The notes: generated from the sequence alone by a model not told the origin. DNA of 64,000 bases from Isurus oxyrinchus (GCA_026770705.1 JANJGN010000021.1:89404001-89468000), one strand, 5' to 3'; shown: positions 3,836-43,639, counted from the first letter of the stretch. A program made the numbers and translations.

Positions 3836-4162
3836 GTCTGGGACAGGCTGATGGGAATCTGCAGGTGAATGGAATTCTGGGACAGTCAGTTACTTTACCG
3901 GTAAATTTACCATGGACAGACCCTTTGATAATTACCTGGGACTTCAGAAACTTATCCATTCCAAAAAAGATTCAAATATGTACAAAAACTCGAAACAACC
4001 CAGCAGAATGTAACAATGACCTTGGACAGAGGGTCAGGTTAAACCTTACTGACTACAGCCTGGAAATACAGACCCTAATAAAAAGTGACCAAGGTTGGTA
4101 TGAAACTAATGCAAGATCAGGACAGGACGTTCACGAGGAAGTGGTGGAACTGCGAGTTTACG
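3836..4162 (+). CDS. Gene A (CD2/SLAM-family receptor) IgV-like exon
   Basis: tgttccAG acceptor before 3836 and G|GTAATC donor after 4162; 327 nt, phase 1-1. Translates GLGQADGNLQVNGILGQSVTLP...ITWDF...RVRLNLTDYSLEIQTLIKSDQGWYE...VELRVY. Has V-set motifs (G-x-S-V-x-L-P, C-strand W, SL-x-I, D-x-G-x-Y) without the B/F cysteines, as in CD2/SLAM domain 1. Confidence 0.92.
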
Positions 4163-5799
4163 GTAATCTCATTTTAATTAAAGAATGCCTTCTCTGACCT
4201 AACCATCCTTATATGTTTAAAGGTGATTGGAAAGATATTCTTGGACTTGTGCCCAAGTGCCTTGGATCACGTGGATGGAATGAATACTGGAAAATCAGAT
4301 GGGTTGGCATGCATGCCTGCAAAGGAACCTGTGCTGTTTTTAAGTATATGTTAATGTAGGAAAATTAGACTGGTTCCTCTATGCAAGTGACCTCTAACCC
4401 ACCCAGTTTTTTGTTGTGTTTGTGTCAGACCCAGGAGAATATTCCCTGAAATTCTGACTTTTGATGTATATACATAATGCAAGCAGCTGGAATATCATAT
4501 CAAAGCAAATTTTGCCATAAATATCATGGAAGGATGTCATCCTGTTTCATAAATACTTTCTGTGCTTATCAAAGGCAAAAGTAAACCTGAGAGCAGGAAG
4601 ACTTAGACCATCATCCTGCCATCATTCATGCATCAGGAAGGACGAATTTCCTGAAGACATGCTTTATTGTCACAAGTATACCAGGGTTAGACTTCCAACT
4701 GGCCTGATGTCGACTCAATCCCAAATCTTGAGAATGGGCTCATTGGCATAAAAAGGTTCGACACCATGCCATTTACTGTGCGGTGAGGGCATTGGAGCTG
4801 TGCAAGAGCAGAAATATCAGAGCAGTGTCCAGCTGTTCTTCTGAGAACACTGCAGATGGAGATCATATTTTTTAAAAAGGTGCTGCTGTAAATGCTCAAT
4901 TGATCCACATTTCCCAGTTAGGTGCCCACCCACATGAAAGAATATTATACTTTTGCCAAGGCAGGGGTCGAACTAGCATGTTTTCTGCTGACAGAATATC
5001 ATCCAATCAATCTTGCCTCTTTAAAATGTGTCAAAATGGAAGTGAGTGCCTGCTTCTTGCATTGAATTTCAAGTGTTGCAGAACTGGCATGCTCGTTTCC
5101 TCAATCCTACACTTCACATACACAACTTAAGACTTCCTTCTGCCCTTTCGGATGTGCTTTTCAAATGTAATATTTAAAACAACTTCTTAAAAACTATGTG
5201 GCAAAAAGTCCCAAATCATAACAATCCCTCAATAAAATTCACCCTAAAAGGTAGATTCATCTTCAGTTATCTGCTCAAAGGCAGCTCCAACCCACAGTGC
5301 CACAAACCACACAATGGGTAAGGTAGGGACTGAAACCCAAGCTGTTTGGCATCAATCTGATCCACACTGGCCATCCAGCCAACTGAAACAAACAGCCCCC
5401 CGCCCCCCCTAAGGAGCCTGGCTTACATTTTTATATGCATGCTCTAGCCTGGAGCTCTGGATAGTGGTAGTAGAGGTTCCAATTTCTTTCCATCACATGG
5501 GTGACCAGGAATCTCTCCTGGTCTTACAGCTTTCTATTAGCATATGTTCGAAGGATTTACAAGATGATGCTCAACCTTGTCTGGTCACATTATGAACACA
5601 CCTTCCTTGGCCATCAAGCCCTGGGGTTGGACATGAACCCTGGGCTTCTGACTCAGAGGCAGGGCTCTACCACTGTGCCACAAGATCTCCTCATATGTTA
5701 TTTTTTTTAAAAAGAAACTTATCCATTGAGAAGTGGCAGAAAGGACAGGCTAGAAAAGATAAATAACATTAATACCCTGCACCCAGCATCAGAGATATT

Positions 5800-6520
5800 C
5801 AGTACAATGCGGAAAACTCTCCCGCAATACCCTTGCTCGCAATAAATCTCATTCACCCATCAACCCACTGTGCTTGCTGCCTTACACTGGTTCCCAATTG
5901 AGCACTGCCTTGATTTTCAAAATTACATCGTGTTCAAATCCTTCCACGGCCTCACTCTTCTCTATCTCTGTAATCTGTTCCAACCCAAAAACCTTCTAAG
6001 ATATCTGTACTTGTTAGCTCAGTTGGATAGATGGCTATAGATTGATACTAACAGCATAGGTTCAAATCCCTGTACTGGTTGCCATAGTTCATGGAGGCTT
6101 GCCTTGCCCCATGATTGATGTGGAGAGGTGCCCCTCAATCTATATGACCAATTGTATATCACTAATCAAGATGTATGCCTATTGCCATTTGTGGGCTGCA
6201 GCTAATTACTTATTCTAACTCACTCTCTTGTACATGCCTAATTTTAATTGCTACACCCTTGATGAACATTCCTTCAGCTGTCTACCCCCTAAGCTTTGAA
6301 ATTCTCTCCCGAAATCATTCCACTTTTTCCTTCCTTCAAGATGCTCCTTAAAATGTATTTTTTTTTGTTCATTTGAGGGATGTGATCATTGCTGGCAAGG
6401 CCAGCATTTACTGCCTAAACCTAATTTCCCTTCAATTTTTCTTTGATAACGTTCCTGTGAAGTGCCATGAGATGTTTTATTATGTTCAAGGCACAATATA
6501 CATGCAAGCTGTCATTGCTT
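5800..6520 (+). mobile_element. L2-like LINE 3' fragment with nested tRNA-SINE (~6010-6210) and LINE tail (~6355-6425)
   Basis: HINPLCLLALHWFPI-like L2 RT C-terminus; tRNA A/B boxes tagctcagttgg...ggttcaaatccc. Confidence 0.55.
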
Positions 6521-7140
6521 TGGACAAGAAACAGTGTAAACCTCCAAGATTAGATGGACATCAAGAGGGAATGGTGTAGTACAGAACAATATTATTTTTA
6601 ATTCATTCTTAGTGTGGCCATTGCCATTGTCATTTGGACCAAATATTTATCGCCCATCCATAGTTGTCCTTGAGAAAGTGGTGGTTGATGGTCTTTGTGA
6701 CCTCCTGCAGTCCCTGTAGTGAAGGTATTCCCATAGTGCTGTTAGGTTCGGGTTCCAAGATTTTGAATCTACGATGTACAAGGTCTCTTGAGGCAGGTGG
6801 GTTGCCGCTGTTATCTGTGAGTTCCTTCATTTGTCCAAAGTAGTAGCTTCCAGCTTCTGATCACAAGGCTCCTTACTGAGGGAGTCAGAAGCATTAGCTT
6901 CTGTTGCTTTTTCTGTGGGGGATTAAATAAAAGATGGTCAATTGATCTTCTCCTGTATTGTTATTGAAAGGCAAAGAAACTTAGGCCAGATTAGGAAAGA
7001 GGCTCTTGGAAATCCTTCACTGATCCACCAAACTGATCAAACAAGTTCAATTATACCATGTCTGGGAAGCACATTCCCTGATATCCACCTACCTTCTATA
7101 TCTTGTATCATCAATTTTACTTGTGCTTTTCTTTAAACAG

Positions 7141-7428
7141 AACGTTTATCAAATCCAACAATACAGATAAACAATGTCTCCTCTAATGGGATCTGTAATG
7201 TTAGCATGAGCTGTGTCATGGAAAACAACAGTGATCTGAGCTACACCTGGTGGAGAGGAGCAGAGATGATCACATCTGGTGAGCCACACAGTATGCCCAA
7301 CAATTTGTGGAATCTGGAAGTGTCCTTAAATCTACATGATAACAACACAATTTACAAATGCACAGTGAAAAACCCTATTAGTGAGGAGGCGGAGAGCATT
7401 GATCTCGCAATGGAATGTGACATGGAAG
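7141..7428 (+). CDS. Gene A IgC2 exon
   Basis: ctttaaacAG acceptor and G|GTTTGT donor; 288 nt, phase 1-1. ERLSNPTI...GICNVSMSC...YTWW...YKCTVKNPIS...MEC shows the four-Cys C2 pattern with C-x-x-x-N-P-x-S typical of CD2/SLAM domain 2. Confidence 0.92.
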
Positions 7429-8794: not shown

Positions 8795-9590
8795 ATTTAT
8801 TATTTCACAGGATGTGGGAAGTCAATTGGCTAGGCCAGCATTTATTGCCTATCCCTAATTGCCCTTGAGAAGGTGGGGGTGAGCTGCCTTCTTGAACTGC
8901 TATAGTACATGAGGTGTAGGTACACCCACAGTGCTTCTAGAGAAGTGGTTCCAAGATTTTGACCCAGTGATAGTGAAGGAACAGTGTCCCTTCCAAGTTA
9001 CAGGTCAAGTTGGTGTATGGCTTGGGTGGGGGAGGGGCAGGGGCTTAGAGGTGGTAATGTTCTCATGCATCTGCTGCCCTTGTCCTTGTTGGTGGGTTTG
9101 GAAGCTGCTTTCGAAAGAGACTTGGTGAGTTCCTGCAGTGCATTTTGTATATAGTACACTTTGCTGCCACTGTGTCGGTGGTGGAGGAAGTGACTGTTAA
9201 GGTGGTGGATGGCGTGCAAATCAAGTGGGCTGCTTTCTCCTGGATGGTGTCGAACCTCTTGAGTGTTGTTGGAGTCGCACTCATCCAGGCAAGTGGAGAA
9301 TATTCCTTCAAACTCCTGACTTGTGCCTTATAGATGGTGAACAGGCTTTGGGGAGTCAAGGGGTGAGTTAATTGCTGCAGAATTCCCAGCCTCTGACCTG
9401 CTCTTGTAGCCACAGGTCCAGTTAAGTTTCTGGTCAATGGTAACACCTCAGGATGTTGATGGAAGATTCAGCAATGGTAATGACATTGAATCTCAAGGGG
9501 AGATGTTTAGATTCCTGCTTGTTGGAGATGGTTATTGCCTGGCACCTGTGTGGCGCGAATGTTACTTGCCATTTATCGGCTCAAGCCTTC
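8795..9590 (-). mobile_element. CR1-group LINE family 1, 3' fragment
   Basis: RT C-terminus IYKAQVRSLKEYSPLAWMSA; 3' tail gggcaattagggataggcaataaatgctggcctagcc. Confidence 0.85.
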
Positions 9591-10680: not shown

Positions 10681-10806
10681 GTAACAAGGCACGAAGCAAA
10701 CAACAACTCCACATCGGCCTAATAATTGCTGGGATTACTATATTTATTTTCATCCTGATTAACATATTCTTTGTGTTGAGGAAGAAACATCTCAAGCCCA
10801 ATGAAG
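10681..10806 (+). CDS. Gene A transmembrane exon
   Basis: atcttttcAG acceptor; phase-1 frame GNKARSKQQLH-IGLIIAGITIFIFILINIFFVL-RKKHLKPNE is a hydrophobic helix plus basic stop-transfer. The 3' end is either 10806 (GC donor, phase 1) or 10810 (GT donor, phase 2). Confidence 0.85.
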
Positions 10807-10884
10807 GCAGGTACTCTTGATTGTTCATCTTTTTGTGTCACAGTTTAATTCCAGTGGTTAATAGCTGCTAAGCAGGGCACATAA

Positions 10885-11565
10885 GGTGGAATTTAATGCC
10901 CTTCCCGCACCCCCAAGGCAAGTTTGGAGGCAGGGAAGGGGATTTAATTGGGCAGGAGGGTGCTGGGTGGGGAACATGCAGCCTTTCCACCTCTACCCCA
11001 ATTAAGTCTGGGGCGGCAGCTTGTGGAAGGCCTTTCCACCCTACTGCCAACTGAGAACGTTAGGTAGGCAATTAATGCACACTTAAGGGTTTCAATCCGC
11101 CACTACTGGTATTCACCCAGTGTGAGCAGGGCACTCGTCATACTATGAGCCCAAAAAGCAAATCTTGCTTGCAGGCTCTCGGAGGTTGGGGTTGTCCCTT
11201 GTTGTCCGGCAGTCACTGCCTAATTGAGGGACCTGGCATTGGAAGGGTACAGCACTGAAAGCCACCCTGCCTGCCCTTGCTGCTGAACTTCCTCCCCTGC
11301 GAGTCCCTGCCTTGCAACCCCTTACCTCCTTCAGTCATCTGGGTCCTTCAGCGGCCCTGGGTCTCTCTGGTGGGTACATTACTGACAGCTGCCATCCCAC
11401 CAGCAGGCACAGCCTACAATGCTCAGCGGCCGGCCTCTGATTGGCCGGCAGCTCTCTGTGAGTGGGACTTCCATCCCCAGAGACCTAGATCCCAGGATCC
11501 CGCTGTCCATTTAAGTGTCTGATTGGAACTTCATATGGCTAGGATGCATTAAATACCGCCCACAG
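10885..11565. mobile_element. GC-rich MITE-like element
   Basis: Starts ggtggaatttaatg; shares ctgattggccggcagctctc with the element at ~32387-33465. Confidence 0.5.
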
Positions 11566-13045
11566 TTTTCCTCACACAAGATCACAGCATTCATTCATAG
11601 CTGGATCACTGGTTTTAATTACCATCTAGTCCTTCTGACTGTTGGTAAGAGCTGCTGGAGTGAGACCACATAATCTCCTGAGCAGAATTTCAACATGAAT
11701 CCTAGAAGTGAATGGACTGTGTCTTAGCACACTTTGGTACTTGATCCATAATGATTGTGTTTGAAATCAAGTTCCAGAAGTGAAAGGACAGTTATTAATG
11801 CACCATGTGACTTTATCCCATACCATCCAGATTTGAGATGAAAGGACAAAGTCCAATGCTCATGACACCTAGTTCCTTGGCAGATGCTATGCCATTGCAT
11901 CAAGCAAGTGGCTGCTGGTTTGAGAAGAAGTTTGATTTGATGATTTTAAAAAGGTTTAATGGGTGCTGTTCAACCTGTGTACTGATTGTATCAAATTAAT
12001 TTATTTTAAAGCTCTTAAATTGAAACTAGTCACCTAACAGCAGAAGAATGCAACTCATTGTGGTACTGACATAACAACTGATAAAGGTCATAACTGATTT
12101 GACCAATGTACTATAGAATATGGACTTATTATCAACTACAAAAGATTAGAAATATACTGGGTAGGATTTCTGTTCTGTGGTTGGGACACCAATGTCAGGG
12201 CCATTTCCAAGTTCTGATCCTGCATGGCATTGTGACACATATGCTGTGATTTCTGAATGAAAGGCCATTTAATGGCCAGAGGATGCACTTATCATCCAAC
12301 AAGGATGGTGGACAGCTCCCAGTCCTGGAGGGCCAACCTGGTAAACCCACAAGTAAAAAAGGGAGAGGGCACCTCAAGATGGTTTAAATTCCATCCTGAA
12401 GTCTACCACTGCTCCACATCCACCTCTCCCACCTTGTTCTGCCATCGGGAGATCATCTCCTTTCACTGGCTGTGTTTTGGCCACTGTGGGGAGCCTGCCT
12501 GTTGACTACAAGATTCCAGTTGGTGTGAGAGAGCCTTAATAAACTCCTTAGTTGCTTCAATTGACTACCCACCACTTGGAGTGAGGGGGATGGGGGTGTT
12601 GTCTTTGCACCTCCTACCTGGCCTCCTTGAAAATGACCCAGAGGCAACTCTCCCATGATGATTTTTCTACTCAGCAGCCTCCAGTCCCACCTTCATGGCC
12701 ATTTGAAAATCTGGCTCATTATCTGTGTGCCACTAACTCTAACTATCTATAAAATATCAACCAACAACTTAGACATTTCTTGGATCCTGTGGAATGAGGC
12801 CCTTCTCCCACCTTCATGTATAAACAATCAGTAGCCATAATATAAGCACCTTAGCAGATTCTGTTTACTGTAGGTATGCAGATTGTACTAACTGACAGTG
12901 AATTAATGGCACACTGGCACCCAAAATGAGATCTTGAAGGAGGATGAGAGGACAGGAGTGGGGGTGGGGGGGAAAGGTTGCATCGAGTTTTTAACGTGTT
13001 CCTACAAAAAAATTGGAAAGGAACCAAGATGTCAAACACCACTTG

Positions 13046-13725
13046 GGGTGGAATTTTTCACTTAGAGTGCAGGCACGCGCCCGACATGCCCAAGCGGAAA
13101 TAGCGCATGATGATGTCAGGTGAGCGTCCTGGCATCATTGTGCACTTGCGTGATATTTCAGTTGGCGAGCGTGTGTGAGAGTCAGCAGCGCACCTGCCGA
13201 CAATTAAGAGGCCTATTATGACCATTAACATATTAATCAACCATAATTTTTGCTGCCCGTTCATTGTTATGTTTGGCTGGTGGGTGAATTGGCCAGGTGG
13301 CCTTTGCCTTTTTGAGGAAACCACATCCAAGGGTGGGATGAGGTTTCCGATATTAATTTTTTTTTTAAATTAAAATGTTTGCTCAGAATATATGTTCTGG
13401 TGACTGATTCTGATACATCGGCATTTTCCCCCAGTTTTACAATCTTTATTTGTGGCATTTAAATTCTTCAGCTCCCTGACCCTCTCTGCGTTCAGGGAGT
13501 TTTCTGTGAGCACTCCCCTGTGCCTGCGCTGACTTCATCGTTCGCCCTGCTCCCGCCCCAACCCCGGCAGCGCTGAGCCTTTCAGCGCACTTTTCATGCA
13601 AGCTGGCTGCTAATTGGCCAGCCAGTGTGAAATCACAGTTGGGGTCTGATCGTGGTCGGGGATCCATTCCTTGGCTGCTCGAGCCTGCCGATCGCGGGCA
13701 CCCACCGAACTAAAAATCATACCCT
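13046..13725. mobile_element. GC-rich Harbinger-type MITE
   Basis: Ends ggggtggaattttt...aaaaatcataccc; homologous to 21231-21914 and 52553-53174. Confidence 0.65.
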
Positions 13726-14099
13726 AGAATATTGATGCAGTATTGCTATACGCCAGTGTATTTGATAAACACTTTATCGCAGCAGAATTACAGTCTGCTG
13801 GACAACCAAGGGCTCCATTACTGCACAAGATCTGCAGCTACCTTTATCGCACCACTGAACACTAGAAAAGAAAAACTTGCTTGATAGGTGAACCCTCTTA
13901 CTTCTAGATCTGATTTCTCTTTTTTTTTCTACTTGAATCACATTATTGCAGTCCGTGCTTTTCCTGTTCTTGAAATCTCCAAATATTCTCTCAGCCTCTT
14001 TTTCCTATGCTCCTCCAGTAAAATGATTGATATGGAAGAGTAGAAGATTCAGGAGAGGAAACTTATGTGCACAAGACATTAAAATCAGCACCTCAAAGT

Positions 14100-14885
14100 A
14101 AATTAGGATGCATGAAAAACTAATGGAATACCAGGCTTTTGTGGCAAGAGGCACAGAATTAAAAGTTGAGATGTAATGGCGAATATATATAAAGCATCAA
14201 TGAGACCAGTTAAGAGTACTGTGCAGAATTTTAGTTCTACAGTCACTAAAGATGAAGAGGCAATAGAGTGAATACAACGCAAATTAACCATGGTGCTGTG
14301 TGGAGTGAGGAAATACCAAAACAAAAGACTTAAGGTTGAGATGTTTTTGTTAGAGCTGGAGATTTGTGTGTTTAAAGTTATCAAGGAATGGGAGAGTACA
14401 TAGAGGCAGATATTTGCAGCACTGTGTCCAATGACTCAAGGGTCTGGAATAAGGGGATATAAGATTAAAAGTAAGATACTTGAGACAGAGAGTAGGAAAA
14501 GCAATTGTCCACAGAGAGTAGTGAGACTATGAAATGTACTTCCAGAATTAGTGACTGAGTGAATGAAGCAGGGACCATAGAATGAATGTCATCAGGGCTG
14601 TGATGTCCACATATTATAATTTAGTCACATAGCTCTACGTGACTGAATATTGGTGGAGATGAAAGCCATAACTTTGATGGAGATTCAGTGGAAACAACGT
14701 TCTGCTGAAGTTGATTCCAAGGAAATTTAATCCCCATGCCAGCTTTTAGGAATAGGATAGAAAGATGTTTCAAGGGTAAAACAAGGATAGATACAGGAAC
14801 AGGGCGAGCATGTGGGATTAGGACTGCTGCTCATTCAGATAAACATTGATATGAATTGGTTTGACTGAATGGCGTATTTTGTCAC
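14100..14885 (+). mobile_element. Degraded CR1 LINE 3' fragment
   Basis: YKASMRPVKxYCAEF-like and VRLxNVLP-like motifs; CR1-type 3' end. Confidence 0.6.
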
Positions 14886-15851: not shown

Positions 15852-15925
15852 CTCCTAACACTGAAAGGACAAGTGAACCAGCACAGTACGCTGTAATCAG
15901 GAAACCGATCTGTGCCAGGGTCCAG
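15852..15925 (+). CDS. Gene A cytoplasmic exon with ITSM-like AQYAVI
   Basis: ttattcaaAG acceptor (phase 1) and CAG|GTTAGT donor (phase 0). Encodes (A)PNTERTSEPAQYAVIRKPICARVQ; its phase matches the terminal exon. Confidence 0.65.
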
Positions 15926-17787: not shown

Positions 17788-17928
17788 TTCTTCCAAAGAG
17801 GAGTCATACTGGACTCAAAACATTAACTCTGCTTCCCTCTCCACAGATGCTGCCAGGCCTGCTCAGTTTTTCCTGCATTTTCTGTTTTTATTTCAGATCT
17901 CCAGCATCTGCAGTATTTTGCTTTTATA
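17788..17928 (+). mobile_element. Degenerate Penelope pseudo-LTR
   Basis: gagtcatactggactcaaaacattaactct...gatgctgccaggcctgct...gcagtattttgctttt, homologous to 35475-35611. Confidence 0.72.
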
Positions 17929-19780: not shown

Positions 19781-19963
19781 TCCCAGGGACATATATACCA
19801 ATTGGATGCAAACAAAAGGCAGCAAAGTCAAGGAGTTCAACTCACCACGATATATGATGAGATAAAATTCAACCCTGATGTGTCGACACCCAAGATGGTG
19901 ATGCAGAAAGGAGAGGAAGAAGTGCCAACGCCTGACTGTTATCTACAGCTACATAAAAGATAA
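19781..19963 (+). CDS. Gene A terminal coding exon with ITSM TIYDEI
   Basis: ttctttcaAG acceptor, phase 0 (alternative in-frame AG 6 nt downstream). Encodes SQGHIYQLDANKRQQSQGVQLTTIYDEIKF...DCYLQLHKR*; T-x-Y-x-x-I is the ITSM of SLAM-family tails. Confidence 0.8.
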   Translation, partial: SQGHIYQLDANKRQQSQGVQLTTIYDEIKFNPDVSTPKMVMQKGEEEVPTPDCYLQLHKR

Positions 19964-27360: not shown

Positions 27361-27411
27361 TGCCTAGCAACAATGTTTTAATTGGCTCCTGATCAGGTGA
27401 CTAAGATTTTA

Positions 27412-32891: not shown

Positions 32892-33192
32892 CATATGAAT
32901 TAGGAGCAGGAGTAGGCCACTCAGCCCCTCGAGCCTGCTCTGCCATTCAATAAGATCATGGCTGATCTGACTGTAACCTCAACCCAACAATCCAGTCTAG
33001 CCTCAATAATCTTTCATCCCCTTGTTAATCAAGAATTTATCTAGCTCTGCCTTAAAAATATTCAAGGACTCTGCTTCCACCACCTTTTGAGGAAAAGAGT
33101 TCCAAAGACTTACCACCCTCTCACAGAAAAAAATTCTACTCATCTGACTTAAATGAGCGAACCCTTTTTTTAAAACGGTGACCCCTAGTTCG
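32892..33192 (-). mobile_element. CR1 LINE 3' end nested in a GC-rich MITE
   Basis: FFCERVVSLWNSFPQKVVEAESLNIFKAELDKFL. Confidence 0.8.
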
Positions 33193-33779
33193 AGTTCTAA
33201 TTTTTGGGCTTCCACCTTGCCCCTGAGCTCCTCCCGACAGCCTGAAAATTGAGCCTGGTGGAAAACAGCCCTAAAGTGGTTAGTAATTGGCCTCAATTGG
33301 GGCAGGGCTTCAGGCCTTGCCCGTCCCAGCATAAAATTGTGGATCGCTCTATGCAGGCGGGATCCTGTCCGGAGGCCATTTGACAAATTTTAGTTCACTC
33401 CCCTCCCCGACACCCCCGCGTACGAACCTGCCAGTGTGGATACATATAATTACTTTCCATTCCAGAATTTTAAGTGCCAAAAAATTATCTGCACCGTGAA
33501 AGACACCAATACACCCTGACCTGCATGTGAAGCTTCCCAGTCGTCACTGTGGTGTATGCCTGTCAGCGTTGAAACGAATCAATGCAGTCAAGTGAAAAAA
33601 TTCCATGGAGTATTGCTACAGTCGATTTCACCTTAAGCAGGCTGATTGTTGGACCCTGGATGTGACGGAGCAGGTTTACTGTGGAAATAAAAACAAAACT
33701 ATTGGAAGCACATTAACACAAAGTTGGTAAACTCATTTTCTACGGCAGACCTACCAAATATCTTTGCAATTGGCATGGG

Positions 33780-34470
33780 TCACATTCAGCAAAAGAGAGG
33801 TAGAGAAGCAGAGTGATTAAGGAAAGAAATCACAGACTCAAGGCCTAAGCAAGTGAAGGCAAAGCACTAATGATGAAGTAATTAAAATCAGTGATGCATA
33901 AGAGGTCTTAAGCAGAGGAATACAGCTATCTGAGAGAGTTGTGGGGTTGGAAGAGATTACAGAGATAGGGAGGGATGAGGCCATGAAGGGACATGAAAAC
34001 AAGGATGGGAATTTTAAAATAGAGGCCGGATTCCAACCAGGAGTGCATTGGAGTAGTCAAGTCTATTGATAACAAAGGCATGGATGAGGGTTTCAGCAGC
34101 AGTTGAGCTGAGGGAGGAGTCATGCTATGTTACAGACATCGAAATAGACAATCTTGGTTATCATGCGGATATGTGATCAAATATGACACCAAGTTGTGAC
34201 CAGTCTCGTCCAGCCTCAGACAGCTGTCAGAGAGAGGCATGGAGTAAGTGGCAATGCAGCGGCTTTTGTGGTGGGAGATGAAAACAATGGCTTCTGTCTT
34301 CCCAATATTTAGTTGGAAGAAATTTCTACTCAGCCAGTACTGGATTTCATTCAAGCTGTCAGACAATTTAGTGACAGGGAGGGTGTCGGGAGAGGTGCTA
34401 GTGAGGTAAAGCTGGCTGTCATCAGTGTGCATTTGAAACAATAATATGAAGAGCACAAGAAGTTTCAGAG
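33780..34470 (-). mobile_element. L2 LINE fragment
   Basis: FQMHTDDSQLYL...WLSRNFFQLNIGKTEAIVF; paralogous copy at 44515-45375. Confidence 0.8.
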
Positions 34471-35421
34471 GGATTGCGCAAGAAGAATGAATCTTTGATT
34501 GAAGGAACGGAAAATGCAAATGAGAGTTTGGGGCTATGATGGGGAGGTGTGTACTTAACTCAGCTGAGTGCAGGAGGAAGGAGTTGGTGGTTTGTGAAGG
34601 AGTAGCCAGCTGGGAAAGATCCCAGAGGTCCAAAAAGACGGGCTTAGAAAGTTCCCCTGCTCCTGAGTCAACCGTGAAGGTTTGGGTGGAGGCACTTGGG
34701 CGAATTTTCTAATAGCCAATCTGAGCCCTGCGCCTTCAGGCTGGATCCAGCCTGCCTGCTATATGTTTCATATCCCTGATGACACAAAAAAACTGCAACA
34801 TTGTGGGTAGAAAACTTTTATTGCAAATTCAAACAGATAACAGGAAACTCTGAAATCTGCAATGTGTCTCGGTTTGTTTTCACTTTGTTAAACACTCAGG
34901 ATGTTGTCAATTAACACTCTAAAACAGTTGCACAAGCATTGACTTGTGGCACAATGCCGCAATACACTGGGACTAGATGGTACTGCTGTTGAGATCACAC
35001 AAGCTCCACCTGCAACCAGGCTGTGGTTCAAGAGCAAACTGTGATACACAGACTCCATCGATGGGGGCGTAACCTCCTTGAAGCCTGGTTCTCTGGGAGC
35101 TTCTAGCCATTGCCACTAGGGTGGACAAAGTCTCCAGATAACAACCTCATCTTGCTGCTATAAGACCAGCTTTGAACTAATTCTGCAAATCCTGCTTTCA
35201 GCTAGCTGAACCACCTGAACTTCAACACTTACATGAAGGAACCCTCACTGGACTCTAACAGTCACATGAATTAATATTCCTATTTCTTTTCATCGTTCCA
35301 AATTAGTCCTAGTTGTAAAACAATTTTTTCATATCCCCTTGTGTGTTGCAATGACCATCCCCTGGGTTTGAACATGTGAATAAACAACACATCTGACTTA
35401 ATCCTAATGACAGTTTGCTGC

Positions 35422-35611
35422 GTGGAGAGATAAACAGAGTTAACGTTTCGAGTTGGTAAGACTCTTCTTCAGAGTGAAGAAGAGTCATACCGACTTGAAA
35501 CGTTAACTCTATTTTATCACTCCACAGATGCTGTTAGACCTGCTGAGTTTTCCCAGCATTTTCTGGTTTTTTTTTTCAGATTTCCAACATTCACAGTATT
35601 TTGCTTTTATC
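35422..35611. mobile_element. Penelope pseudo-LTR mini-element (second subfamily, inverted arrangement)
   Basis: Inverted pLTR halves meet near 35472; 14-bp TSD TGA(C/G)AGTTTGCTGC at 35408 and 35612; the minus strand reads CUGAAGA...GAAACGUU. Confidence 0.8.
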
Positions 35612-37561
35612 TGAGAGTTTGCTGCAAGTCATTTCAAAATATTCAAAAAGCAAAACACCTCTGTTTACGGACAGATGGCAAGAAAAATAAAGGAGTTCAG
35701 TTTGCCTCCCTCCCCTATCCATAACAGGATTGTTTCTTTTCTTATTATATATAAATGACCTGGGCTTGGAAATGGCTTCTTTTTGTGCTGTAAAATTCTA
35801 TGCTTTTAAAGAAATGGAGTTTAAGGATGCCACTTCCATCTTTATCCTTACAGAGTGGTATATAATAATACCAGACAGTGAAAAGAGAATATTCCCATTG
35901 CCAAACAATTTTAAAAATTGTTTCTGAAAGTCAAAGAGGGATGTTCTGGAGAGGGGTGTATGCTAGGGAGGAGATAATGGGGGAGCGCAGATGCACAAGG
36001 TTACTGAAAGACTTATTCGCACAACTGTGGAGTGCATAAAAAATTGCCATTATGCTTCAATGTCCAATTTATTGAGCATAACATGGGATTAATATCTGTA
36101 CATAGCACAATAAAAAGTAACTGTCTTTCAGTGAAATAGTGTTGTTATAGATGATAGGTGAACATGGAAACAAAATTTAATGAATCGTAGGAAAAATATC
36201 TAGAAGACATTTCATGACATGAAAATTAGGAAAAGTCAATGACTGATAGGCATAATGGAGTACCAATACATTATAGAGCAGTCGCTCCCAATGCGATGTG
36301 GGTTCATAGGACTATACATGGAAAGCACACACTGTCAAAAGCACACCTATCAACTCACACATCAATCAATTCGTCCACACAGAGGTTCGACAGTGTCATG
36401 TGGCCACCCATCAGACGATCAATCGAGTGCACCTACTATACATAGTGAAGATTAGTGTATTTTCCATTCTGGCCAGGTAAGTCAATTTAAGTTTTAGATA
36501 ATCTCTACCAACCACGTCAATCTTCGTAGGCAGCAGAAATTTTAAAAATCAGCAAGTCTCCCAACTTTAACATGTCATCAAAGAATGTTCCAACTGACAA
36601 TGTAAAGCATAGCAATGGAGGAAAGCCCAAGGTGACAACAACATCTTGTATTCAAATAGTGCCTTGAATGTAATATCTCAAGGCATTTCACAGGAGAGTT
36701 GTAACTTAAAATTTGACACTGAGTCACATGATTGTATGGAAGAGTGCAAGAGCACGTTTTCTCTCACTTGCTCACAAAGATTGTGATAGAATCAGCAAAA
36801 AATTATGTGCTTTAGCTTAAAACAGCTAACAAGAGTGTTATTGCGGGTTCTGGTTCCTCATTCTGCAATGCACTGACTAGCCTGAGAGCTGAATTCTGAT
36901 GCAAACTGCCAAACACATAACAGCTCACTGACCATTTCTGGGAATGGATAAAGTTTAATCTGTAATACTGTATTCTTAGTAGCTGATACTTTATTTGGTC
37001 ATGCTGCTTACAGAATTACAAAGACCACATCCCTGAACTACACGTTCAGTGAACGTTGGATACTGCTAGCTTATGACAATTGTCAATAGTTTGCCTGTGG
37101 CTTCTCGTTTCTTAATTGCACAAGCTGCAAGAAATGACCAGCTTTAATCACTGACTGTTCATTGGAGTGTATAGTTCCAAGCGAACTGAGAGAAATACAA
37201 TCCTGGGGACTACAACGTATTTGCAGTTAAAAGAGATCCACACCTAATCAATGTGGTATTGGAGCTAATTGGAATCATAGCGTGAAGCTTTCTGTTCAAT
37301 ACGACTTCATATCTCACCCTGTTTGGTAAAACAGAATAATCCCTCTGCACCCGTTGTGTATTGAGATATTTCAATACAGCAGCACCCTTTGTAAACTTAA
37401 AACCAGTAGGTAAGACCGTTAATACTTCCTCTGTTTCAATTATTTGAGAAGAATACCTTTGGTTTTAGGTTAAGTTTCTCTGTCGCTGATGAACAGAGGG
37501 CTTGAGGGTAATTGTAACCTAACTCACTGGGCAAGGAAAACAAGTGATTGTGTAGCGAGAG

Positions 37562-38795
37562 ATAGACCAGATAATTACAGGCCAGTCAGTCTAACCTCGG
37601 TAGTGGGCAAATTATTGGAAGTAACAGGGAGGATTGATGAGATTAGTTAGTTGATGTGGTCTACATGGATTATAGCAAGGCTTTTGACAAGTTCCGCATG
37701 GCAGACTGGTTATTAAAATAAAAGCCCATGGAATCCAGGAGAATGCAGCAAGCTGGATACAAAATTGGATCAGTAGCAGGAAACAAAGGGTTTCCAGTGG
37801 GGTTCCGTAGGGCTCAGTACTAGGTCCCTTGCTTTTTGTGGTATATATTAATGAATTGTAAGTAAATGTAGGATGAATAATCAAGAAATTTGCAGATGAC
37901 ACAAAAATTGGCTGTGCAGTTGGTAGCTAGGAGGTTGTTGTAGACTGCAGGAAGACATCAATGGACTGGTCAGGCGGACAGAAAAGTGGCAAATAGAATT
38001 CAACCCAGAGAAGTGAGGTGATGCATTTGGGGAGGTCAACCAAGTCAAAGGATTACACAATAAATAGGAGGATACTGAGAAGTGTAGAGGAAGTGAGGAA
38101 CCTTGGAGTGAATGTCCACAGATCCCTGAAGGTACCAGGACAGATTGGTAACGTGGTTAAGGCTTATGGAATCCTTTCATTTATTAGCTGAGGCATAGAA
38201 TATAAAAGCAGGGAGGTTATGCTGGAAAGTATAAAACATTAGTTAGGTCATACCTTGAGAACAGTACCATACGCAGTTCTGGTCACCTCTTCACAGAAAG
38301 GATGTAATTGCATTAGGGAGGGTATGGAGAATATTTACAAGGATGTTGCCAAGACAGGAAAATTGCAGCCATGAGGAAAGATCAGATAGGCTGGGGTTGT
38401 CCTCTGTGGAACGGAGAAGGCTGAACGGAGATTTGTTTGAGACTAACAAAATTGACAGGGGCATGGATAGAATGGATGGGAAGTGCCTATTTAGCAGAGA
38501 TCAGTGACTAGACGGCATCGATTTAAAGTGATTGGTAGAAGGATTAGAGAGGAGATCGTAAAAAAATGTTTCACCGAGAGGGGTCTGGAACTCACTGCCT
38601 GAAAAGCTAGTAGAGGCAGAAACCCTCAACTCATTTAAAAGGTGTCTGGATATGCACTTCAGGTGCCGTAACCTGCAGGCCTACGGACCAAATGCTGGAA
38701 ATTGGAATTAGGCTGACAGGCTCATTTTTCAGTTGGTGCAGACACATTGGGCCAAGTGGCCTCTTTCTGTGCCACAAAACTTCAACGATTCTAAA
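37562..38795 (+). mobile_element. CR1 LINE RT/3' fragment
   Basis: NYRPVSLTSVVGK, VDVVYMDYSKAFDKVPH-like, KFADDTKIG, WNSLPE motifs with stops. Confidence 0.85.
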
Positions 38796-39103
38796 CAGAA
38801 CTACAGTCAATTGTTTTATACTAAATACTTTCTATCCAGTACATTAAATGTGGTTAATTTTTCATTTTTGTTGCCTGATTTCTTCACACCCAGGTGGTTT
38901 ATTGAAATGCGTATTTGTCTTTGTCATTGTTGGCTGTCCCTCGATTCGAGGGTGACATCTACTCAGGGATGAGTTTCTGCCATGGATCTGCCATGGCATC
39001 AACGAACCCTCCAAAATGTGAATTAGGTGTTGGGAGATCTGTGGTTTCTCAATTCCTTCCCCCAGTCTCTTACTGATAAGTTAATATTCTTTTTTCCTAG
39101 AAT

Positions 39104-39182
39104 ATGTTCTCATTTTACTCATATTCCCCTATTGAGCAGTGCATCCCCTGGTAAATATTGGTCCTGTTCATCACTGACCCAG
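39104..39182 (+). pseudogene. Gene B leader exon with in-frame stop
   Basis: ATG at 39104; MFSFYSYSPIEQCIPW*ILVLFITDP then G|GTAAGA phase-1 donor about 200 nt before the V exon. TAA at 39152-39154, where paralog C has TTA. Confidence 0.75.
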
Positions 39183-39379: not shown

Positions 39380-39706
39380 GTCTGAGACAGGCTGATGGGA
39401 ACCTGCAGGTGAATGGAATTCTGGGACAGTCAGTTACTTTACCGGTAAATTTACCATGGACAGACCCTTTGATAATTACCTGGGACTTCAGAAACTCATT
39501 CACTGCAAAAAAGATTCTTGTAGGTACAAAACCTCGAAACAAGCCAGCAGAATGTAACAATGACCTTTGGCAGAGGGTCAGGTTAAACCTCAGTGACCAC
39601 AGCCTGGAAATATAGACCCTAATAAAAAGTGACCAAGGTCAGTATGAAACTAATGCAAGATCAGAACAGGACGTTCACAAAGAAGTGGTGGAACTGCAAG
39701 TTGATG
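39380..39706 (+). pseudogene. Gene B IgV exon with nonsense codon
   Basis: 327 nt with the same splice sites as the gene A V exon and ~92% nt identity; CAG>TAG at 39613-39615. Confidence 0.9.
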
Positions 39707-40338: not shown

Positions 40339-41592
40339 AGGGCAATTTCTCCCTCACTTACCTTGAGAGGCATCCTGCTGCTGTGTTCAAGTTGGAGGCA
40401 TCTTATTGACCCTCCTACTTCCAAAGACTGCCCACATTCTTAATGGCCCGTTGGCAGCAGATGTGCTTGGCAGCGTGAGCAGACAATACAGCGAGAAGGC
40501 AAAAAGTCGGTTTTATGTGAAATCAGGTCGCAACCGTCTGCTCCGCCCGTCAATGGCAGGCCATATTTCCCGTTGCCACATCGGGAACCTAATTTCAATA
40601 CTTTAGCATCTCATTATAAGTTCTGCTCGCTGAATCATCCCCCCGCATGTTAGATCATCCGAGCATGTGGACATGTTCCACAACTGTACATAAGCGATGT
40701 GCACCTGGCGAGCTGCTCTTCACTTGGGACTTTGAGGTTTGCCTCTACCTTGCTTCAGTCAGCACTTGTGGTCATCAGCGCGAACTTCACAGGCAGCACC
40801 ACATCATTTTTAGGGATGGGGCTCATGGGCAGGTCTGTATGTACCAGGCCAGCCATGAGGTGAGGGTGGCATTTCAATAGCTGCAGGACTAGGGCTTACT
40901 TGGGGAAAGGGGTGAAGTGGCCTCAGGCAAGAGAAGAATCTGCAGGGCGAAGACTGTACTGGGGAAGGAGGGGATCTCCGGGTGTGTGTAGGGCACATGT
41001 TCATCTGTGCAAGTGGCCTCAAGATGATGAGGGCTGAGGAGGCAGTCTTTAGAGGAGATGAGGCCAAATGGAGATGTGAGGGTGTGTGTGAGACAGTGAG
41101 TGGCGACGTCCCTTGAGCTGGGAGTGAGTGAGATGTCAGTGAATGTGTGATGGCTTTGTGAGTATGTGAATTTAGACTGATGAGATGGTTACCTTACCCT
41201 GGCAGCAAGGATGAGATCACTCATCCTCTTTCTGCACTACATGCCAGTCTCTTCTGCGCAGCATTGGCACTGACCACCACTGTCACCTCCTCCCAAGCCA
41301 GCATGGTGAGATTGATGGACCTCCTATGGTCAGAATGGGGGTGGAAGACATCATGATGCCCTTCCAAAAGGCATTCCAGTGACAGGACACTGAACTTTTG
41401 GCATTCAGGGCCATGTCTTTACAGGAGCAGTCCTAAAGCTGCAAGCATTGAGAACTGTGTGCACCCAGTGTGAGGAAGCAGTGAGGTAACAATTCAGAGG
41501 ACGCCAGCCAGTGAGACAGTGTGTTTCCTGTGGCTGCCTAATTTTTCACACCCACTACCACACTTAGTGCAATTCTGGACAATTCCACCCAG
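40339..41592 (-). mobile_element. Harbinger-derived element with Myb/SANT-like ORF remnant
   Basis: Minus strand 41300-41210 reads AWEEVTVVVSANAAQKR/(frameshift)*CRKRMSDLI; GGG...CCC ends. Confidence 0.6.
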
Positions 41593-42187: not shown

Positions 42188-42410
42188 TGCAGATTAGCTG
42201 CAGTATTCGCCTGCATAACAACAGTGACTGGGCTTCAGAGATATCTTTGGGAGTCAGAGAGAAATTTACAACATTTTTTTACCCAAATGGGCCATGGTTT
42301 TTAAACTGTTTTTCACCTCTGTGAAGCAATCACGTGGCTTTGGGTGGAGTAGAGGGTGTATATATTGGGATGCATACAGTATAATAATTATACAGGATGC
42401 GCTGGATTGA
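42188..42410 (+). repeat. ~220-bp direct repeat, copy 1
   Basis: Matches 43661-43882 (gcataacaacagtgactgggcttcagagatatctttggg exact). Confidence 0.88.
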
Positions 42411-42588
42411 TCAGAAGGCTTTTTCCTGTCCAGCATTACTAGTATCTTTGTAAGTGTTTTCAACATTTCTGAGGAAAGTAACAAGATGCTGGATATGTAC
42501 AAATGATATTTTAAATAGCATTTTAAAAATCTGCTCATCCCACATGTGCACCACTCCACCCTGCTAACAAGATTTTATTCACTTTCAG

Positions 42589-42870
42589 AACGTGTATCAA
42601 ATCCGAGAATACAACTGATCAGCAGCGTCTTCTCTGATGGAATCTGTAATGTTACCCTGAGCTGTTCAGTGGAAAGTGGCAGTGACCTGATGTACAGCTG
42701 GTGGACAGGAGGAGAGTTGGTCACACCTGGTGGGCCATACATTGTGACCGACAGTGGGAGGAAACTCAGCATGTCCATAAATCTACACAAAACCAGCACA
42801 GTTTACAAGTGCATGGTGAGAAACCCTGTTAGTGAGAAGACTGAAAGCGTGGTCCTCACAGGGCCCTACT
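42589..42870 (+). CDS. Gene B IgC2 exon (frame intact)
   Basis: actttcAG acceptor and T|GTAAGC donor; 282 nt, phase 1-1. ERVSNPRIQ...GICNVTLSC...YSWW...YKCMVRNPVS; the fourth Cys codon is split T|GC with the next exon. Confidence 0.85.
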
Positions 42871-43499
42871 GTAAGCAACCAATTAAGCTTATTTCATAGG
42901 AGCTAATGGAGCTGCGACTCCAATTAATAATTGAAATACAGGAATGGTTGTCAAATATAATTTGAGTTGGTAGCTTTTATTAACTCAGAGGGTTGGTTTA
43001 ACATGACCTTGCAAATTAAACATCTACGCAATTTAAAGGAAGTTACAAATTCACCTTGGGTGGTATTACGTTGGCCACCCATTACGCATCCCACTGGATA
43101 TTCAGTTCCACTGAAGCTGACAAAATTGATTACTAAGCAGGGCACATACGGGAGTCCAATGCAATACTATTTGCAAAACTGCCCAGGACTAATTTCTATC
43201 ACCAGCTAAATGATTCCAGATTATTCTGCAACAAAACCTAGCAATCATCAATGGAAAGGATCATTTGACAGGGTGTAAAACAGGCAGGAGATCCACTGGT
43301 GCCAGTTTTCTGCCAGTGATGACAGTTAAAATTATCCTATCTTAGAGTGTCAGCAATTAAAATACTCATTATAGATATTTTCAGTGGATATATTGCCATT
43401 ATACAAAATATTGCAGTAATATTAAACTTGATTATTGATCCCACAGCAAGGGATCAAAATCAAAGAGTAACTTATGGTCCCTTTTGTGTATCTTTCTAG

Positions 43500-43639
43500 G
43501 CAGAGGAAAAGAGAAGGCAGATGGCACTCTGCACTCAGTTCAGATCCTGGGAATACGAGCTGTGATATTCACAATCGCTCTCATCATCACAAACACTGAG
43601 GTCTGTGTCTGGGAGCAAAGAACAGTTGAAGGAAACTAA
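43500..43639 (+). CDS. Gene B terminal TM exon with intramembrane Arg and short tail
   Basis: tctttctAG acceptor; the phase-1 join gives CRGKEKADGTLHSVQILGIRAVIFTIALIITNTEVCVWEQRTVEGN*; Arg codon at 43556-43558; no Tyr in the tail. Confidence 0.72.

What the first reader, a model, noticed from the sequence alone, without database searches (positions are those of the whole stretch)
3836..43639. Candidate paired-receptor system in the CD2/SLAM family: ITSM-tailed gene A beside Arg-TM, tailless gene B with a near-identical V domain
Seen: A splices to V-C2-neutral TM-tail with TIYDEI. B has a V domain ~83% aa identical to A's, its own C2, a TM with Arg and a Tyr-free ~8-aa tail. Known: a shared ligand-binding domain with opposite signalling modules defines paired receptors (LILR, SIRP, CD300, CD200R, Siglec-5/14), whereas mammalian SLAMs signal through ITSM/SAP rather than charged-TM adaptors. 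Inference: this is an adaptor-coupled activating SLAM-like paralog in a probable shark. B is dead in this haplotype, which fits the rapid turnover of activating partners.
Basis: partly seen in the sequence, partly recalled or inferred. Interest (0 to 1): 0.85.

Follow-up and report, generated by a model that had tools for sequence, protein, structure and literature searches.

The report
Shark SLAM-like paired receptor genes
Two neighbouring shark immune-receptor genes share almost the same outer binding domain but carry opposite signalling ends, a pairing kept across several sharks, though the arginine-bearing partner is a transcribed dead gene in this genome.

Summary
Gene A (V 3836-4162, C2 7141-7428, neutral TM 10681-10806, tail exons with TIYDEI at 19847) and gene B (leader 39104-39182, V 39380-39706, C2 42589-42870, Arg-TM exon 43500-43639) lie in tandem on the + strand. 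The V exons are 91.7% (nt) and 83% (aa) identical. The C2 exons are only 76.5% and 50%.

The Arg-TM exon is real. Predicted proteins of Hemiscyllium, two Scyliorhinus species and Mustelus join a B-type C2 to the same segment, and the Arg is kept in 5 of 5 in-frame sequences. An RNA-like contig from this organism uses the 43500 acceptor.

V domains cluster by lineage (4 of 4 B rows) and C2 domains by type. Synonymous divergence is 0.07 in V against 0.37 in C2. This points to recurrent conversion of the V exon, the mark of paired receptors.

B is dead here: two in-frame stops, a decayed TM and aberrant splicing. The V stop is also present in a roughly 98%-identical sister taxon.

Adaptor coupling is inferred, not shown. 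Charged-TM SLAM-like receptors are already known in Xenopus (NxxR type); the shark TM lacks that motif. The scan also noted another disabled SLAM-like V domain elsewhere in this genome.

Verdict: a new member of a known kind, of moderate interest.

The parts
3836..4162 (+). Gene A, V-set exon (phase 1 at both ends), with no canonical B-F disulphide
   Evidence: splice sites; Pfam V-set, 4.4e-7; SLAMF6 6.7e-7; 89% identical to Cetorhinus P0183
7141..7428 (+). Gene A, C2-set exon with four Cys
   Evidence: (93.8% identical to P0183, which fixes the donor at 7428|GT)
10681..10806 (+). Gene A, uncharged TM exon with a basic stop-transfer stretch. The donor is either GC at 10807 (this fits the next exon's phase) or GT at 10811.
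15852..15925 (+). Gene A, cytoplasmic exon with a Tyr motif (AQYAVI)
   Evidence: 92% identical to P0183; splice sites
19781..19963 (+). Gene A, last coding exon. Canonical ITSM TIYDEI at 19847-19864; stop at 19961-63. The family's conserved C-terminal ...SANA-stop lies in another frame at 19921-19935.
39104..39182 (+). Gene B, leader exon (B-type leader) with an in-frame TAA at 39152-54
   Evidence: matches P0167 and P0007 leaders; sequence; X18 record 1 covers it and carries an extra C behind 39125
39380..39706 (+). Gene B, V exon. It is 91.7% nt identical to A's. It has an in-frame TAG at 39613-15. A cryptic donor CAAG|GTCAGT at 39637|39638 is used in RNA.
42589..42870 (+). Gene B, C2 exon of the B type. 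The predicted donor is T|GTAAGC at 42870. The cryptic donor ATG|GTGAGA at 42815|42816 is the one seen in RNA.
43500..43639 (+). Gene B, coding part of the terminal exon: short stalk, TM with Arg (codon 43556-58), about 8-residue Tyr-free tail, stop at 43637-39
   Evidence: E 4e-14 to 1e-9 against four shark proteins; acceptor used in an RNA contig; Arg in 5 of 5
43640..43767 (+). Gene B, 3' untranslated continuation of the terminal exon
   Evidence: X18 record 3 runs unspliced from 43499 to 43767; X19 record 10 covers 43534-43682
51951..52533 (+). Gene C relic: a B-type leader (51951-52025, with an in-frame stop) and a decayed V exon (52225-52533, with a deletion and a stop). No C2 or TM exon was found up to 64000.

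Best explanation
The window holds a tandem pair of CD2/SLAM-family genes from a shark.

Gene A is a conventional SLAM-like receptor: a V domain without the canonical disulphide, a C2 domain, an uncharged TM, and a tail with one canonical ITSM.

Gene B belongs to a second, older lineage found in galeomorph sharks. It has its own C2 exon and a terminal exon that encodes a TM helix with an invariant Arg near its outer end and a tail of about 8 residues with no signalling motif.

The A/B duplication predates the split of Lamniformes and Carcharhiniformes. The V exon of B has nevertheless been overwritten repeatedly from A, or the reverse, by exon-limited gene conversion. Both proteins of a species therefore present nearly the same ligand-binding face. 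This is shown.

By analogy with other paired Ig receptors, an intact B-type protein most likely pairs its Arg with the TM Asp of an ITAM adaptor of the CD3-zeta/FcR-gamma or DAP12 kind. It would then deliver an activating signal on the same ligand that A reads through its ITSM and SAP-type adaptors. This is inferred and was not tested.

In this genome B is a transcribed pseudogene. It has stops in the leader and V exons, has lost conserved V residues, has polar substitutions in the TM, and uses cryptic donors in its RNA. The inactivation predates the split from a roughly 98%-identical sister taxon.
For: Anatomy and splice phases.

Family:
- Pfam V-set.
- PDB hits of the V exon: SLAMF6, CD84, 2B4 and CD150, 5 of 6.
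- A profile of 13 shark proteins hits SLAMF6 over both domains at 6.2e-19.
- NCBI names these proteins SLAM family member 5/9-like or SLAM-like.

The Arg-TM exon is real:
- phmmer of B's C2 exon against 1.84 billion representatives gave 391 hits at E<=0.001. I read 16 of the 150 listed. P0005 (Mustelus) and P0007 (S. torazame) carry the same TM segment after a B-type C2.
- P0167 (S. canicula) and P0168 (Hemiscyllium) carry it too.
- tblastn of these proteins onto the window gives E 4e-14 to 1e-9 at 43487-43636.
- The Arg is invariant in 5 of 5 in-frame sequences.

RNA: X18 record 3 (666 nt) lies on 39467-39635, 42587-42813 and 43499-43767, with GT-AG joints once shared letters are allowed for.

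Conversion of the V exon:
- V tree: 4 of 4 B rows sit in starred clades with A rows of their own lineage.
- C2 tree: B_window sits with the carcharhiniform B rows (82/82). A_window sits with A_Cetorhinus (100/100). The B label needs 2 changes against 5.4 in shuffles, and 0 of 500 shuffles were as low.
- V identity exceeds C2 identity in 6 of 6 A/B pairs.
- dS is 0.073 in V and 0.375 in C2. The flanking introns do not align.

Partners exist in sharks: cd247 and sh2d1a-like are expressed in bamboo shark (passages of PMC11372145).
Against: - No adaptor binding, surface expression or ligand was tested.
- Only 1 of the 5 other-species models (Hemiscyllium) looks complete and unflagged. S. canicula is flagged LOW QUALITY. 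The S. torazame and Mustelus models lack part of the V domain. The Heterodontus model reads the TM exon in another frame.
- The only spliced RNA contig from this organism joins 42815 to 43500, which puts the TM out of frame. The 42870 donor was seen only unspliced, and the runs are only guessed to be RNA.
- The Arg lies near the outer end of the helix and is not in the NxxR context of known FcR-gamma-coupled TMs (0 of 5).
- The C2 exon alone hits CEACAM (7 of 19 hits) and no SLAM or CD2 chain (0 of 19). The profile's top PDB hit is CEA.
- No tree with reference CD2, SLAM and CEACAM proteins was built.
Confidence: 0.6

Rival explanations
1. B-type proteins are tailless SLAMF8/SLAMF9-like or decoy receptors that bind the same ligand as A but couple to no ITAM adaptor. 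The conserved Arg would sit at the outer membrane interface, or serve assembly or retention rather than signalling.
For: NCBI's pipeline names several of them SLAM family member 9-like. The Arg is only about 5-7 residues into the hydrophobic stretch. There is no NxxR motif. No adaptor evidence was obtained.
Against: An Arg at the extracellular end of a type I TM goes against the usual charge distribution, yet it is kept in 5 of 5 sequences across three shark orders. The combination of a shared V domain, a charged TM and a minimal tail is the standard signature of adaptor-coupled partners (established knowledge of the KIR, LILR, SIRP and CD300 families). SLAM-like receptors with an FcR-gamma-type TM exist in Xenopus.
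Confidence: 0.2
2. The B lineage is largely a family of decaying duplicates with no present function in any species. The Arg-TM segment persists by descent, and the gene models that carry it are annotation products.
For: B is dead here and in the sister taxon. Gene C is a further relic. Four of the 5 other-species models are truncated, flagged or frame-shifted. V dN/dS between A and B here is about 1.15.
Against: The Hemiscyllium model is complete, with leader, V, C2, a well-hydrophobic Arg-TM and a tail. The TM segment is about as conserved as the C2 domain between orders: 50-67% against 51-70%. The intact-looking TMs keep high hydrophobicity (2.68-3.08) while the dead one here has dropped to 2.04. 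That contrast is what selection elsewhere plus decay here would give.
Confidence: 0.12
3. The near-identity of the two V exons reflects a recent duplication, or purifying selection on V alone, and not gene conversion.
For: V domains are functionally constrained. The similarity ends within about 12 bases of the exon borders. Selection on coding sequence could produce that pattern as well.
Against: Synonymous divergence is five times lower in V (0.073) than in C2 (0.375) of the same gene pair. V trees follow the lineage and C2 trees follow the gene type. The introns are unalignable, which excludes a recent whole-gene duplication.
Confidence: 0.05
4. 43500-43639 is no TM exon. It is either a chance open frame or the decayed 5' end of a former V exon, whose beginning it faintly resembles.
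For: tblastn aligned it weakly to the start of the V exons (E 0.05-0.5). The best local DNA alignments of all three V exons fall at the same spot.
Against: The DNA scores are within shuffles (z 1.26, 0.71, 0.07). A V-domain HMM scores the five TM segments no better than their shuffles: 13, 306, 129, 187 and 327 of 400 shuffles reach the observed score. The segment is conserved as the C-terminus of proteins of four species, and its acceptor is used in RNA.
Confidence: 0.02

Closest known systems
Xenopus CD2/SLAM-family receptors with NxxR transmembrane segments (Guselnikov et al. 2011, Immunogenetics 63:679). I know this paper only through passages of PMC6557307 and PMC4536121; the paper itself is not held.
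   Same: These are SLAM-like ectodomains joined to a TM carrying an Arg, of the kind that couples to FcR-gamma. A non-mammalian SLAM family with both tyrosine-motif and charged-TM members is therefore already described.
   Different: The shark TM has no Asn three residues before the Arg (0 of 5). It shows no detectable likeness to gene A's TM exon. It occurs as one conserved partner beside an ITSM gene rather than within a family of about 70 genes. Its V exon is homogenised with its neighbour. I could not check whether the Xenopus paper reports such pairs.
CEACAM1/CEACAM3-type paired receptors, with concerted evolution of the N-domain exon (PMC2832619, search listing and abstract; PMC5112662, abstract and two passages)
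   Same: The ligand-binding N-terminal Ig exon is kept alike between an inhibitory or switch-motif gene and an activating neighbour by gene conversion. The activating partners turn over quickly. The C2 exon here is most like CEACAM1 C2 domains.
   Different: CEACAM activating partners carry ITAM-like motifs in their own tails, not a charged TM with a minimal tail. The V exon here hits SLAMF6 and CD84 and no CEACAM chain.
Siglec-5/Siglec-14 (PMC4042635, search listing and abstract), and the KIR, LILR, SIRP and CD300 pairs (recalled)
   Same: Nearly identical ligand-binding domains. One partner has tyrosine motifs. The other has a basic TM residue, a short tail and an ITAM adaptor.
   Different: These are different Ig families and are mammalian. 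Adaptor use is proven there and not here.
Mammalian SLAMF8 and SLAMF9 (NCBI's automatic name for several B-type proteins; their properties are recalled)
   Same: A two-domain SLAM ectodomain with a short tail lacking an ITSM.
   Different: Orthology was not tested. No conserved basic TM residue or V-exon sharing with an ITSM-bearing neighbour is known to me for SLAMF8 or SLAMF9 (recalled, not checked).

Membership tests
CD2/SLAM family | N-terminal V-set Ig domain without the canonical B-F disulphide | tested here: met
   Pfam V-set at 4.4e-7. The translated V exons of A and B have no Cys at the B- and F-strand positions; the only Cys pair lies in the C'-C'' region.
CD2/SLAM family | Membrane-proximal C2-set domain with four Cys | tested here: met
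   The C2 exons of A and B each contain four Cys at conserved alignment columns. Ig-domain Pfam hits at 6e-5 to 1e-4.
CD2/SLAM family | Closest solved relatives are SLAM or CD2 members | tested here: inconclusive
   V exon: 5 of 6 PDB hits are SLAM family, with SLAMF6 best. C2 exon: 0 of 19 hits are SLAM or CD2 and 7 of 19 are CEACAM. The two-domain profile puts CEA first (1.8e-22, two stretches). SLAMF6 is second (6.2e-19) and is the only hit covering both domains. CD2, CD48, CD58, CD84, CD150 and 2B4 follow.
CD2/SLAM family | ITSM (T-x-Y-x-x-V/I) in the cytoplasmic tail | tested here: met
   Gene A has TIYDEI at 19847-19864. The motif is conserved in A-type proteins of other sharks and skates.
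CD2/SLAM family | Groups with CD2/SLAM rather than CEACAM in a tree with reference proteins | not tested
CD2/SLAM family | Tail binds SAP/EAT-2 | not testable with these tools
   The only related evidence is that an sh2d1a-like gene is expressed in bamboo shark T cells (passage of PMC11372145).
Paired activating/inhibitory Ig receptors | Two linked genes with near-identical ligand-binding domains | tested here: met
   The genes are about 35 kb apart on the same strand. V exons are 91.7% nt and 83% aa identical. Within-lineage V identity is 79-96% in 6 of 6 pairs.
Paired activating/inhibitory Ig receptors | One partner has a tyrosine motif tail; the other has a basic TM residue and a short motif-free tail | tested here: met
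   The Arg is present in 5 of 5 B-type TMs, and the tail is about 8 residues without Tyr.
Paired activating/inhibitory Ig receptors | The charged partner associates with an ITAM adaptor and activates | not testable with these tools
   Inference only.
Paired activating/inhibitory Ig receptors | Concerted evolution of the ligand-binding exon | tested here: met
   Trees. dS is 0.073 in V against 0.375 in C2.
NxxR-type FcR-gamma-coupling TM (LRC, FCRL, Xenopus SLAM) | Asn three residues before the TM Arg | tested here: not met
   In the alignment of five B-type TMs, the residue three before the Arg is Leu in all five, so 0 of 5 have Asn. The motif definition is taken from passages of PMC6557307.

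The most novel reading that the evidence does not exclude
SLAM receptors are typically their own ligands. On that basis, the shark B-type gene may be an activating twin that must keep binding the ITSM-bearing A protein on other cells. Recurrent V-exon conversion would then be the device that keeps a self-ligand and its activating reader matched as A diversifies. On this reading the system arose in cartilaginous fish independently of the amphibian NxxR-type SLAMs, with a TM of its own kind. It sits among the slamf genes that a published map places in the elasmobranch MHC. It has been lost in the lamniform lineage of this window.
Probability: 0.25. Interest if true: 0.65.

Novelty: new member of a known kind. 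Interest (0 to 1): 0.5.

Why it matters
Paired receptors are a recurring solution in vertebrate innate immunity, but almost all worked examples are mammalian. The SLAM family is usually presented as signalling only through ITSM and SAP.

This locus shows that sharks carry a conserved SLAM-like pair: an ITSM gene and an Arg-TM tailless gene, with the ligand-binding exon homogenised between them. The duplication predates the split of Lamniformes and Carcharhiniformes. That pushes charged-TM SLAM-like receptors back to cartilaginous fish.

It also gives a clean natural series for studying the turnover of activating partners: apparently intact in Hemiscyllium, damaged or doubtful in several other species, and dead but transcribed here. 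And it offers a simple test bed, with one Arg and one small tail, for asking which ITAM adaptor is the ancestral partner.

The proteins already sit in public databases under automatic names. The gain is therefore in interpretation, not in discovering a new gene.

Tried and rejected
1. Homology between B's TM exon and A's TM exon. The DNA local score was 22 against a shuffle mean of 22.2, and the protein score of 24 was reached by 222 of 1000 shuffles. No detectable likeness.

2. B's TM exon as a relic of a V exon. Not significant, so dropped.

3. A search with the TM part of P0168 alone (residues 229-278). Only the query itself came back, among 2 candidates. This blank says nothing about kin outside the length window.

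4. ESM Atlas on the same part. The feature score was 0.79, below the lead threshold, and the structure hits were unrelated single helices. Discarded.

5. A's leader exon. It was not found in 1-3835 by tblastn with P0183 or by reading three frames. It is either outside the window or diverged.

6. C2 or TM exons for gene C, and further family exons in 20000-39000 and 43700-64000. Nothing turned up beyond the gene C leader and V and a weak tail-exon relic.

7. The alternative A-type tail seen in other species (a D-I/L-Y-V/I-N-W motif) was not found in 10800-20000.

Their adjacency, integrity and fold therefore stay unchecked.

9. Literature. Searches for SLAM together with shark or cartilaginous-fish terms found no description of a charged-TM or paired SLAM gene in cartilaginous fish. 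I found only a figure legend placing slamf in the white shark MHC map (PMC10751288). Supplements are closed and may hold gene lists that bear on this.

Full report
WHAT IS THERE. The region carries two genes of the same family in tandem on the + strand.

Gene A:
- V exon 3836-4162.
- C2 exon 7141-7428.
- TM exon from 10681. It is uncharged and followed by a basic stretch.
- A short cytoplasmic exon, 15852-15925.
- A last coding exon, 19781-19963, with the canonical switch motif TIYDEI at 19847-19864.
- All Ig-exon borders are phase 1, as expected.
- I did not find A's leader exon in the window.

Gene B:
- Leader exon 39104-39182.
- V exon 39380-39706.
- C2 exon 42589-42870.
- After a 629-base intron and a strong pyrimidine-rich acceptor, an open frame 43500-43639. 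It is in the phase set by the T|GTAAGC donor at 42870. It encodes a short stalk, a hydrophobic stretch containing one Arg (codon 43556-58), about eight further residues without Tyr, and a stop.

The V exons are 82.7% identical in protein over 110 residues and 91.7% in DNA over 351 bases. The C2 exons are 50.5% and 76.5% identical. Nothing outside the exons aligns apart from shared transposon copies.

WHICH FAMILY.
- Pfam sees a V-set domain in A's V exon and generic Ig domains in both C2 exons.
- Against solved structures, the V exon hits SLAMF6 (6.7e-7), CD84, 2B4 twice and CD150. That is 5 of 6 hits; the sixth is DSCAM.
- The C2 exon alone hits CEACAM1 and its kin (7 of 19) and no SLAM or CD2 chain.
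- A profile of 13 full-length shark relatives hits CEA first (two stretches). SLAMF6 is second at 6.2e-19 and is the only hit spanning both domains. CD2, CD48, CD58, CD84, CD150 and 2B4 follow.
- The V domains lack the canonical disulphide and the C2 domains have four Cys.
- NCBI's pipeline names the relatives 'SLAM family member 5-like', 'SLAM family member 9-like' or 'signaling lymphocytic activation molecule-like'.

I file the genes under CD2/SLAM, with two caveats. The C2 domain is CEACAM-like by sequence search. No tree with reference proteins could be built here.

The source is a shark. A's exons are 88-94% identical to a Cetorhinus maximus protein, P0183, so it is a lamniform or close to one. 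The sequencing runs are coded and I do not name the species.

IS THE ARG-TM EXON REAL? I searched B's C2 exon alone against 1.84 billion representative proteins. It gave 391 hits at E<=0.001, of which 150 were listed and I read 16.
- Two of those 16 continue from a B-type C2 domain straight into the same segment as window 43500-43639: P0005 of Mustelus asterias and P0007 of Scyliorhinus torazame.
- Word-based searches with P0007 and then P0168 added P0167 of S. canicula and P0168 of Hemiscyllium ocellatum.
- Mapped back by tblastn, these four C-termini hit window 43487-43636 at E 4e-14 to 1e-9.
- In the alignment of the five in-frame segments, the Arg, its flanking I-L-x-I-R-x-x-I-F core and a C-V-W near the inner end are invariant.
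- A sixth model, Heterodontus P0017, matches the same DNA in another reading frame. I left it out of the Arg count.

RNA evidence. One contig of run X18 comes from the window's own organism; the run is only guessed to be RNA. The contig is 666 nt long and lies on 39467-39635, 42587-42813 and 43499-43767. Allowing for letters shared by both sides, its joints are 39637|42589 and 42815|43500, both GT-AG.
- The acceptor at 43500 is therefore used.
- The exon runs on past the stop to at least 43767, as a terminal exon should.
- The GAG|GT at 43599 is not used.
- The donor at 42870 itself was not seen spliced. Contigs of X19 and X20 run through it unspliced.

I tested two rival readings of this exon and dropped both.
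- It shows no likeness to A's TM exon. That is common for paired receptors and proves nothing either way.
- Its faint likeness to the start of the V exons is at chance level.

THE PAIRING IS MAINTAINED BY CONVERSION. I cut V and C2 domains out of 20 database proteins and the window's exons and built separate trees. Exons were never joined.

V tree:
- It has 21 rows. The truncated V domains of S. torazame B and Mustelus B were left out.
- All 4 B rows sit in well-supported clades with A rows of their own lineage.
- Window B sits with window A and Cetorhinus A (98/97).
- S. canicula B sits with the two Scyliorhinus A rows (100/97).
- Heterodontus B sits with Heterodontus A (99/98).
- Hemiscyllium B sits with Chiloscyllium A (98/97).

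C2 tree:
- It has 22 rows. Window B sits with the three carcharhiniform B rows (82/82; those three 99/95).
- Window A sits with Cetorhinus A (100/100), and then with the carcharhiniform A rows (80/78).
- The B label needs 2 changes against 5.4 for shuffled labels, and 0 of 500 shuffles were as low.
- A single B clade is not rejected (AU p 0.159).

Other measures:
- Within-lineage identity is higher in V than in C2 in 6 of 6 pairs: 79-96% against 40-73%.
- In this window, synonymous divergence is 0.073 in V and 0.375 in C2.

Selection on protein cannot explain the fivefold drop at silent sites. Exon-limited gene conversion can. The A/B duplication is therefore older than the lamniform-carcharhiniform split, and the V exon has been re-copied since then in each lineage.

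B IS DEAD HERE, AND NOT ONLY IN ONE HAPLOTYPE.
- The leader has an in-frame TAA at 39152-54, and the V exon has a TAG at 39613-15.
- Relative to A and to the family consensus, B's V domain has lost one Cys of its only Cys pair, the Tyr of the conserved D-Y-S-L-E-I stretch, the aromatic residue before Y-E, and the Tyr at the end of the last strand. dN/dS against A is about 1.15.
- One of these changes, Trp to Gln, created the cryptic donor that the RNA contig uses.
- The TM has acquired Thr, Asn, Thr and Glu. It is the least hydrophobic of the five: 2.04 against 2.68-3.08.
- The second cryptic donor, at 42815, puts the TM exon out of frame.
- The X18 individual carries an extra C in the leader's C run.
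- DNA contigs of a second taxon (X5, which shares about 59% of sampled 31-mers) keep the TAG and add a one-base insertion in the C2 exon behind 42633. They still have the Cys and Tyr codons at 39523 and 39598.

The gene was therefore already dead before these two taxa split, and it has decayed further in this one. A third copy, gene C (leader 51951-52025, V 52225-52533), is a stop-ridden relic with no C2 or TM exon.

HOW IT MOST LIKELY WORKS.
Shown:
- Two linked SLAM-like genes with a shared binding domain and different membrane and tail modules.
- Conservation of the Arg.
- Conversion of the V exon.

Inferred:
- An intact B-type protein pairs its Arg with the acidic TM residue of an ITAM adaptor and activates, while A recruits SH2 adaptors to its ITSM.
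- The Arg's position near the outer end of the helix is more like FcR-gamma/CD3-zeta partners than like the mid-membrane Lys of DAP12 partners. This comparison is recalled knowledge and was not tested.
- The NxxR motif that marks the conserved FcR-gamma-type TM is absent.
- Sharks do express cd247 and an sh2d1a-like gene (passages of PMC11372145).

COMPARISON AND NOVELTY.
- Paired receptors with converted ligand-binding exons are well known from CEACAM1/3 (PMC2832619 listing and abstract; PMC5112662 abstract and passages) and from Siglec-5/14 (PMC4042635 listing and abstract).
- SLAM-like receptors with an Arg-bearing NxxR TM are described for Xenopus. I saw this only as cited in passages of PMC6557307 and PMC4536121; the 2011 paper is not held.
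- For cartilaginous fish, my searches found only a figure legend placing slamf genes in the white shark MHC map (PMC10751288).
- The shark proteins are in public databases under automatic names.

I therefore rate this a new member of a known kind. It is a shark instance with its own TM type, and with unusually clear evidence of V-exon conversion and of loss in one lineage.

LIMITS.
The integrity and neighbourhood of the other species' genes, and any fold comparison, are therefore untested.
- The consecutive accession numbers of the S. torazame pair (GCB63027 and GCB63028) only hint at adjacency.
- The RNA runs are guesses. They are contigs, so they show presence and not levels.
- Paper supplements are closed.

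Noticed in passing
window 51951-52533: A third family member, gene C. It has a B-type leader exon with an in-frame stop. Its V exon is 43-50% identical to family V domains, with an internal deletion of about 8 residues and a stop. No C2 or TM exon follows up to the window's end.
   Followed up: partly
window 19906-19963: Gene A's last codons differ from all relatives. The conserved C-terminal ...SANA-stop is encoded in another frame at 19921-19935, so the assembly carries a one-base frame difference after the ITSM. This gives a 14-residue unrelated end. It could be a real variant or an assembly error.
   Followed up: partly
window 32274-32360: Between A and B lies a weak match (E 0.71, two stops) to the ITSM-bearing tail exon of A-type proteins. 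It may be the relic of a lost A-type copy. It is not significant on its own.
   Followed up: no
window 10803-10812: The phase of A's next exon (15852) and the protein of Cetorhinus require A's TM exon to end at 10806. That makes the intron start with GC rather than GT. A GT donor four bases on (10811) would fit the alternative tail seen in other species.
   Followed up: partly
window 2735-3044, 8827-9588, 25466-26303, 29614-29993, 30526-30843, 50393-50677, 62441-62739: One repeat family is present in at least seven copies in both orientations, at 74-85% identity, with open frames that end alike. It is presumably a retroelement and accounts for most A-versus-B DNA matches outside the exons.
   Followed up: no
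window 40576-41560 and 44516-44900: Summed contig depth in the sister taxon's DNA run is very high here, up to about 300,000 against about 24 elsewhere. There are also many internal joints, so these are high-copy repeats inside B's second intron and downstream of B.
   Followed up: no
proteins P0179, P0180 (Leucoraja and an unnamed contig): Skates have a different short-tailed isoform or gene of the same family. Its TM has an Arg just before the hydrophobic stretch rather than inside it, and its tail is about 17 residues with no Tyr motif. Whether it is the batoid counterpart of the B type is open.
   Followed up: no
proteins P0012, P0185, P0175, P0178, P0034: A-type genes of several sharks and rays have an alternative tail with a D-I/L-Y-V-N-W motif instead of the ITSM exons. 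No such exon was found in window 10800-20000.
   Followed up: partly
window 43472-43624: The start of B's TM exon and the bases just upstream faintly resemble the leader end plus the V start of A-type proteins (E 0.23). This is not significant.
   Followed up: yes
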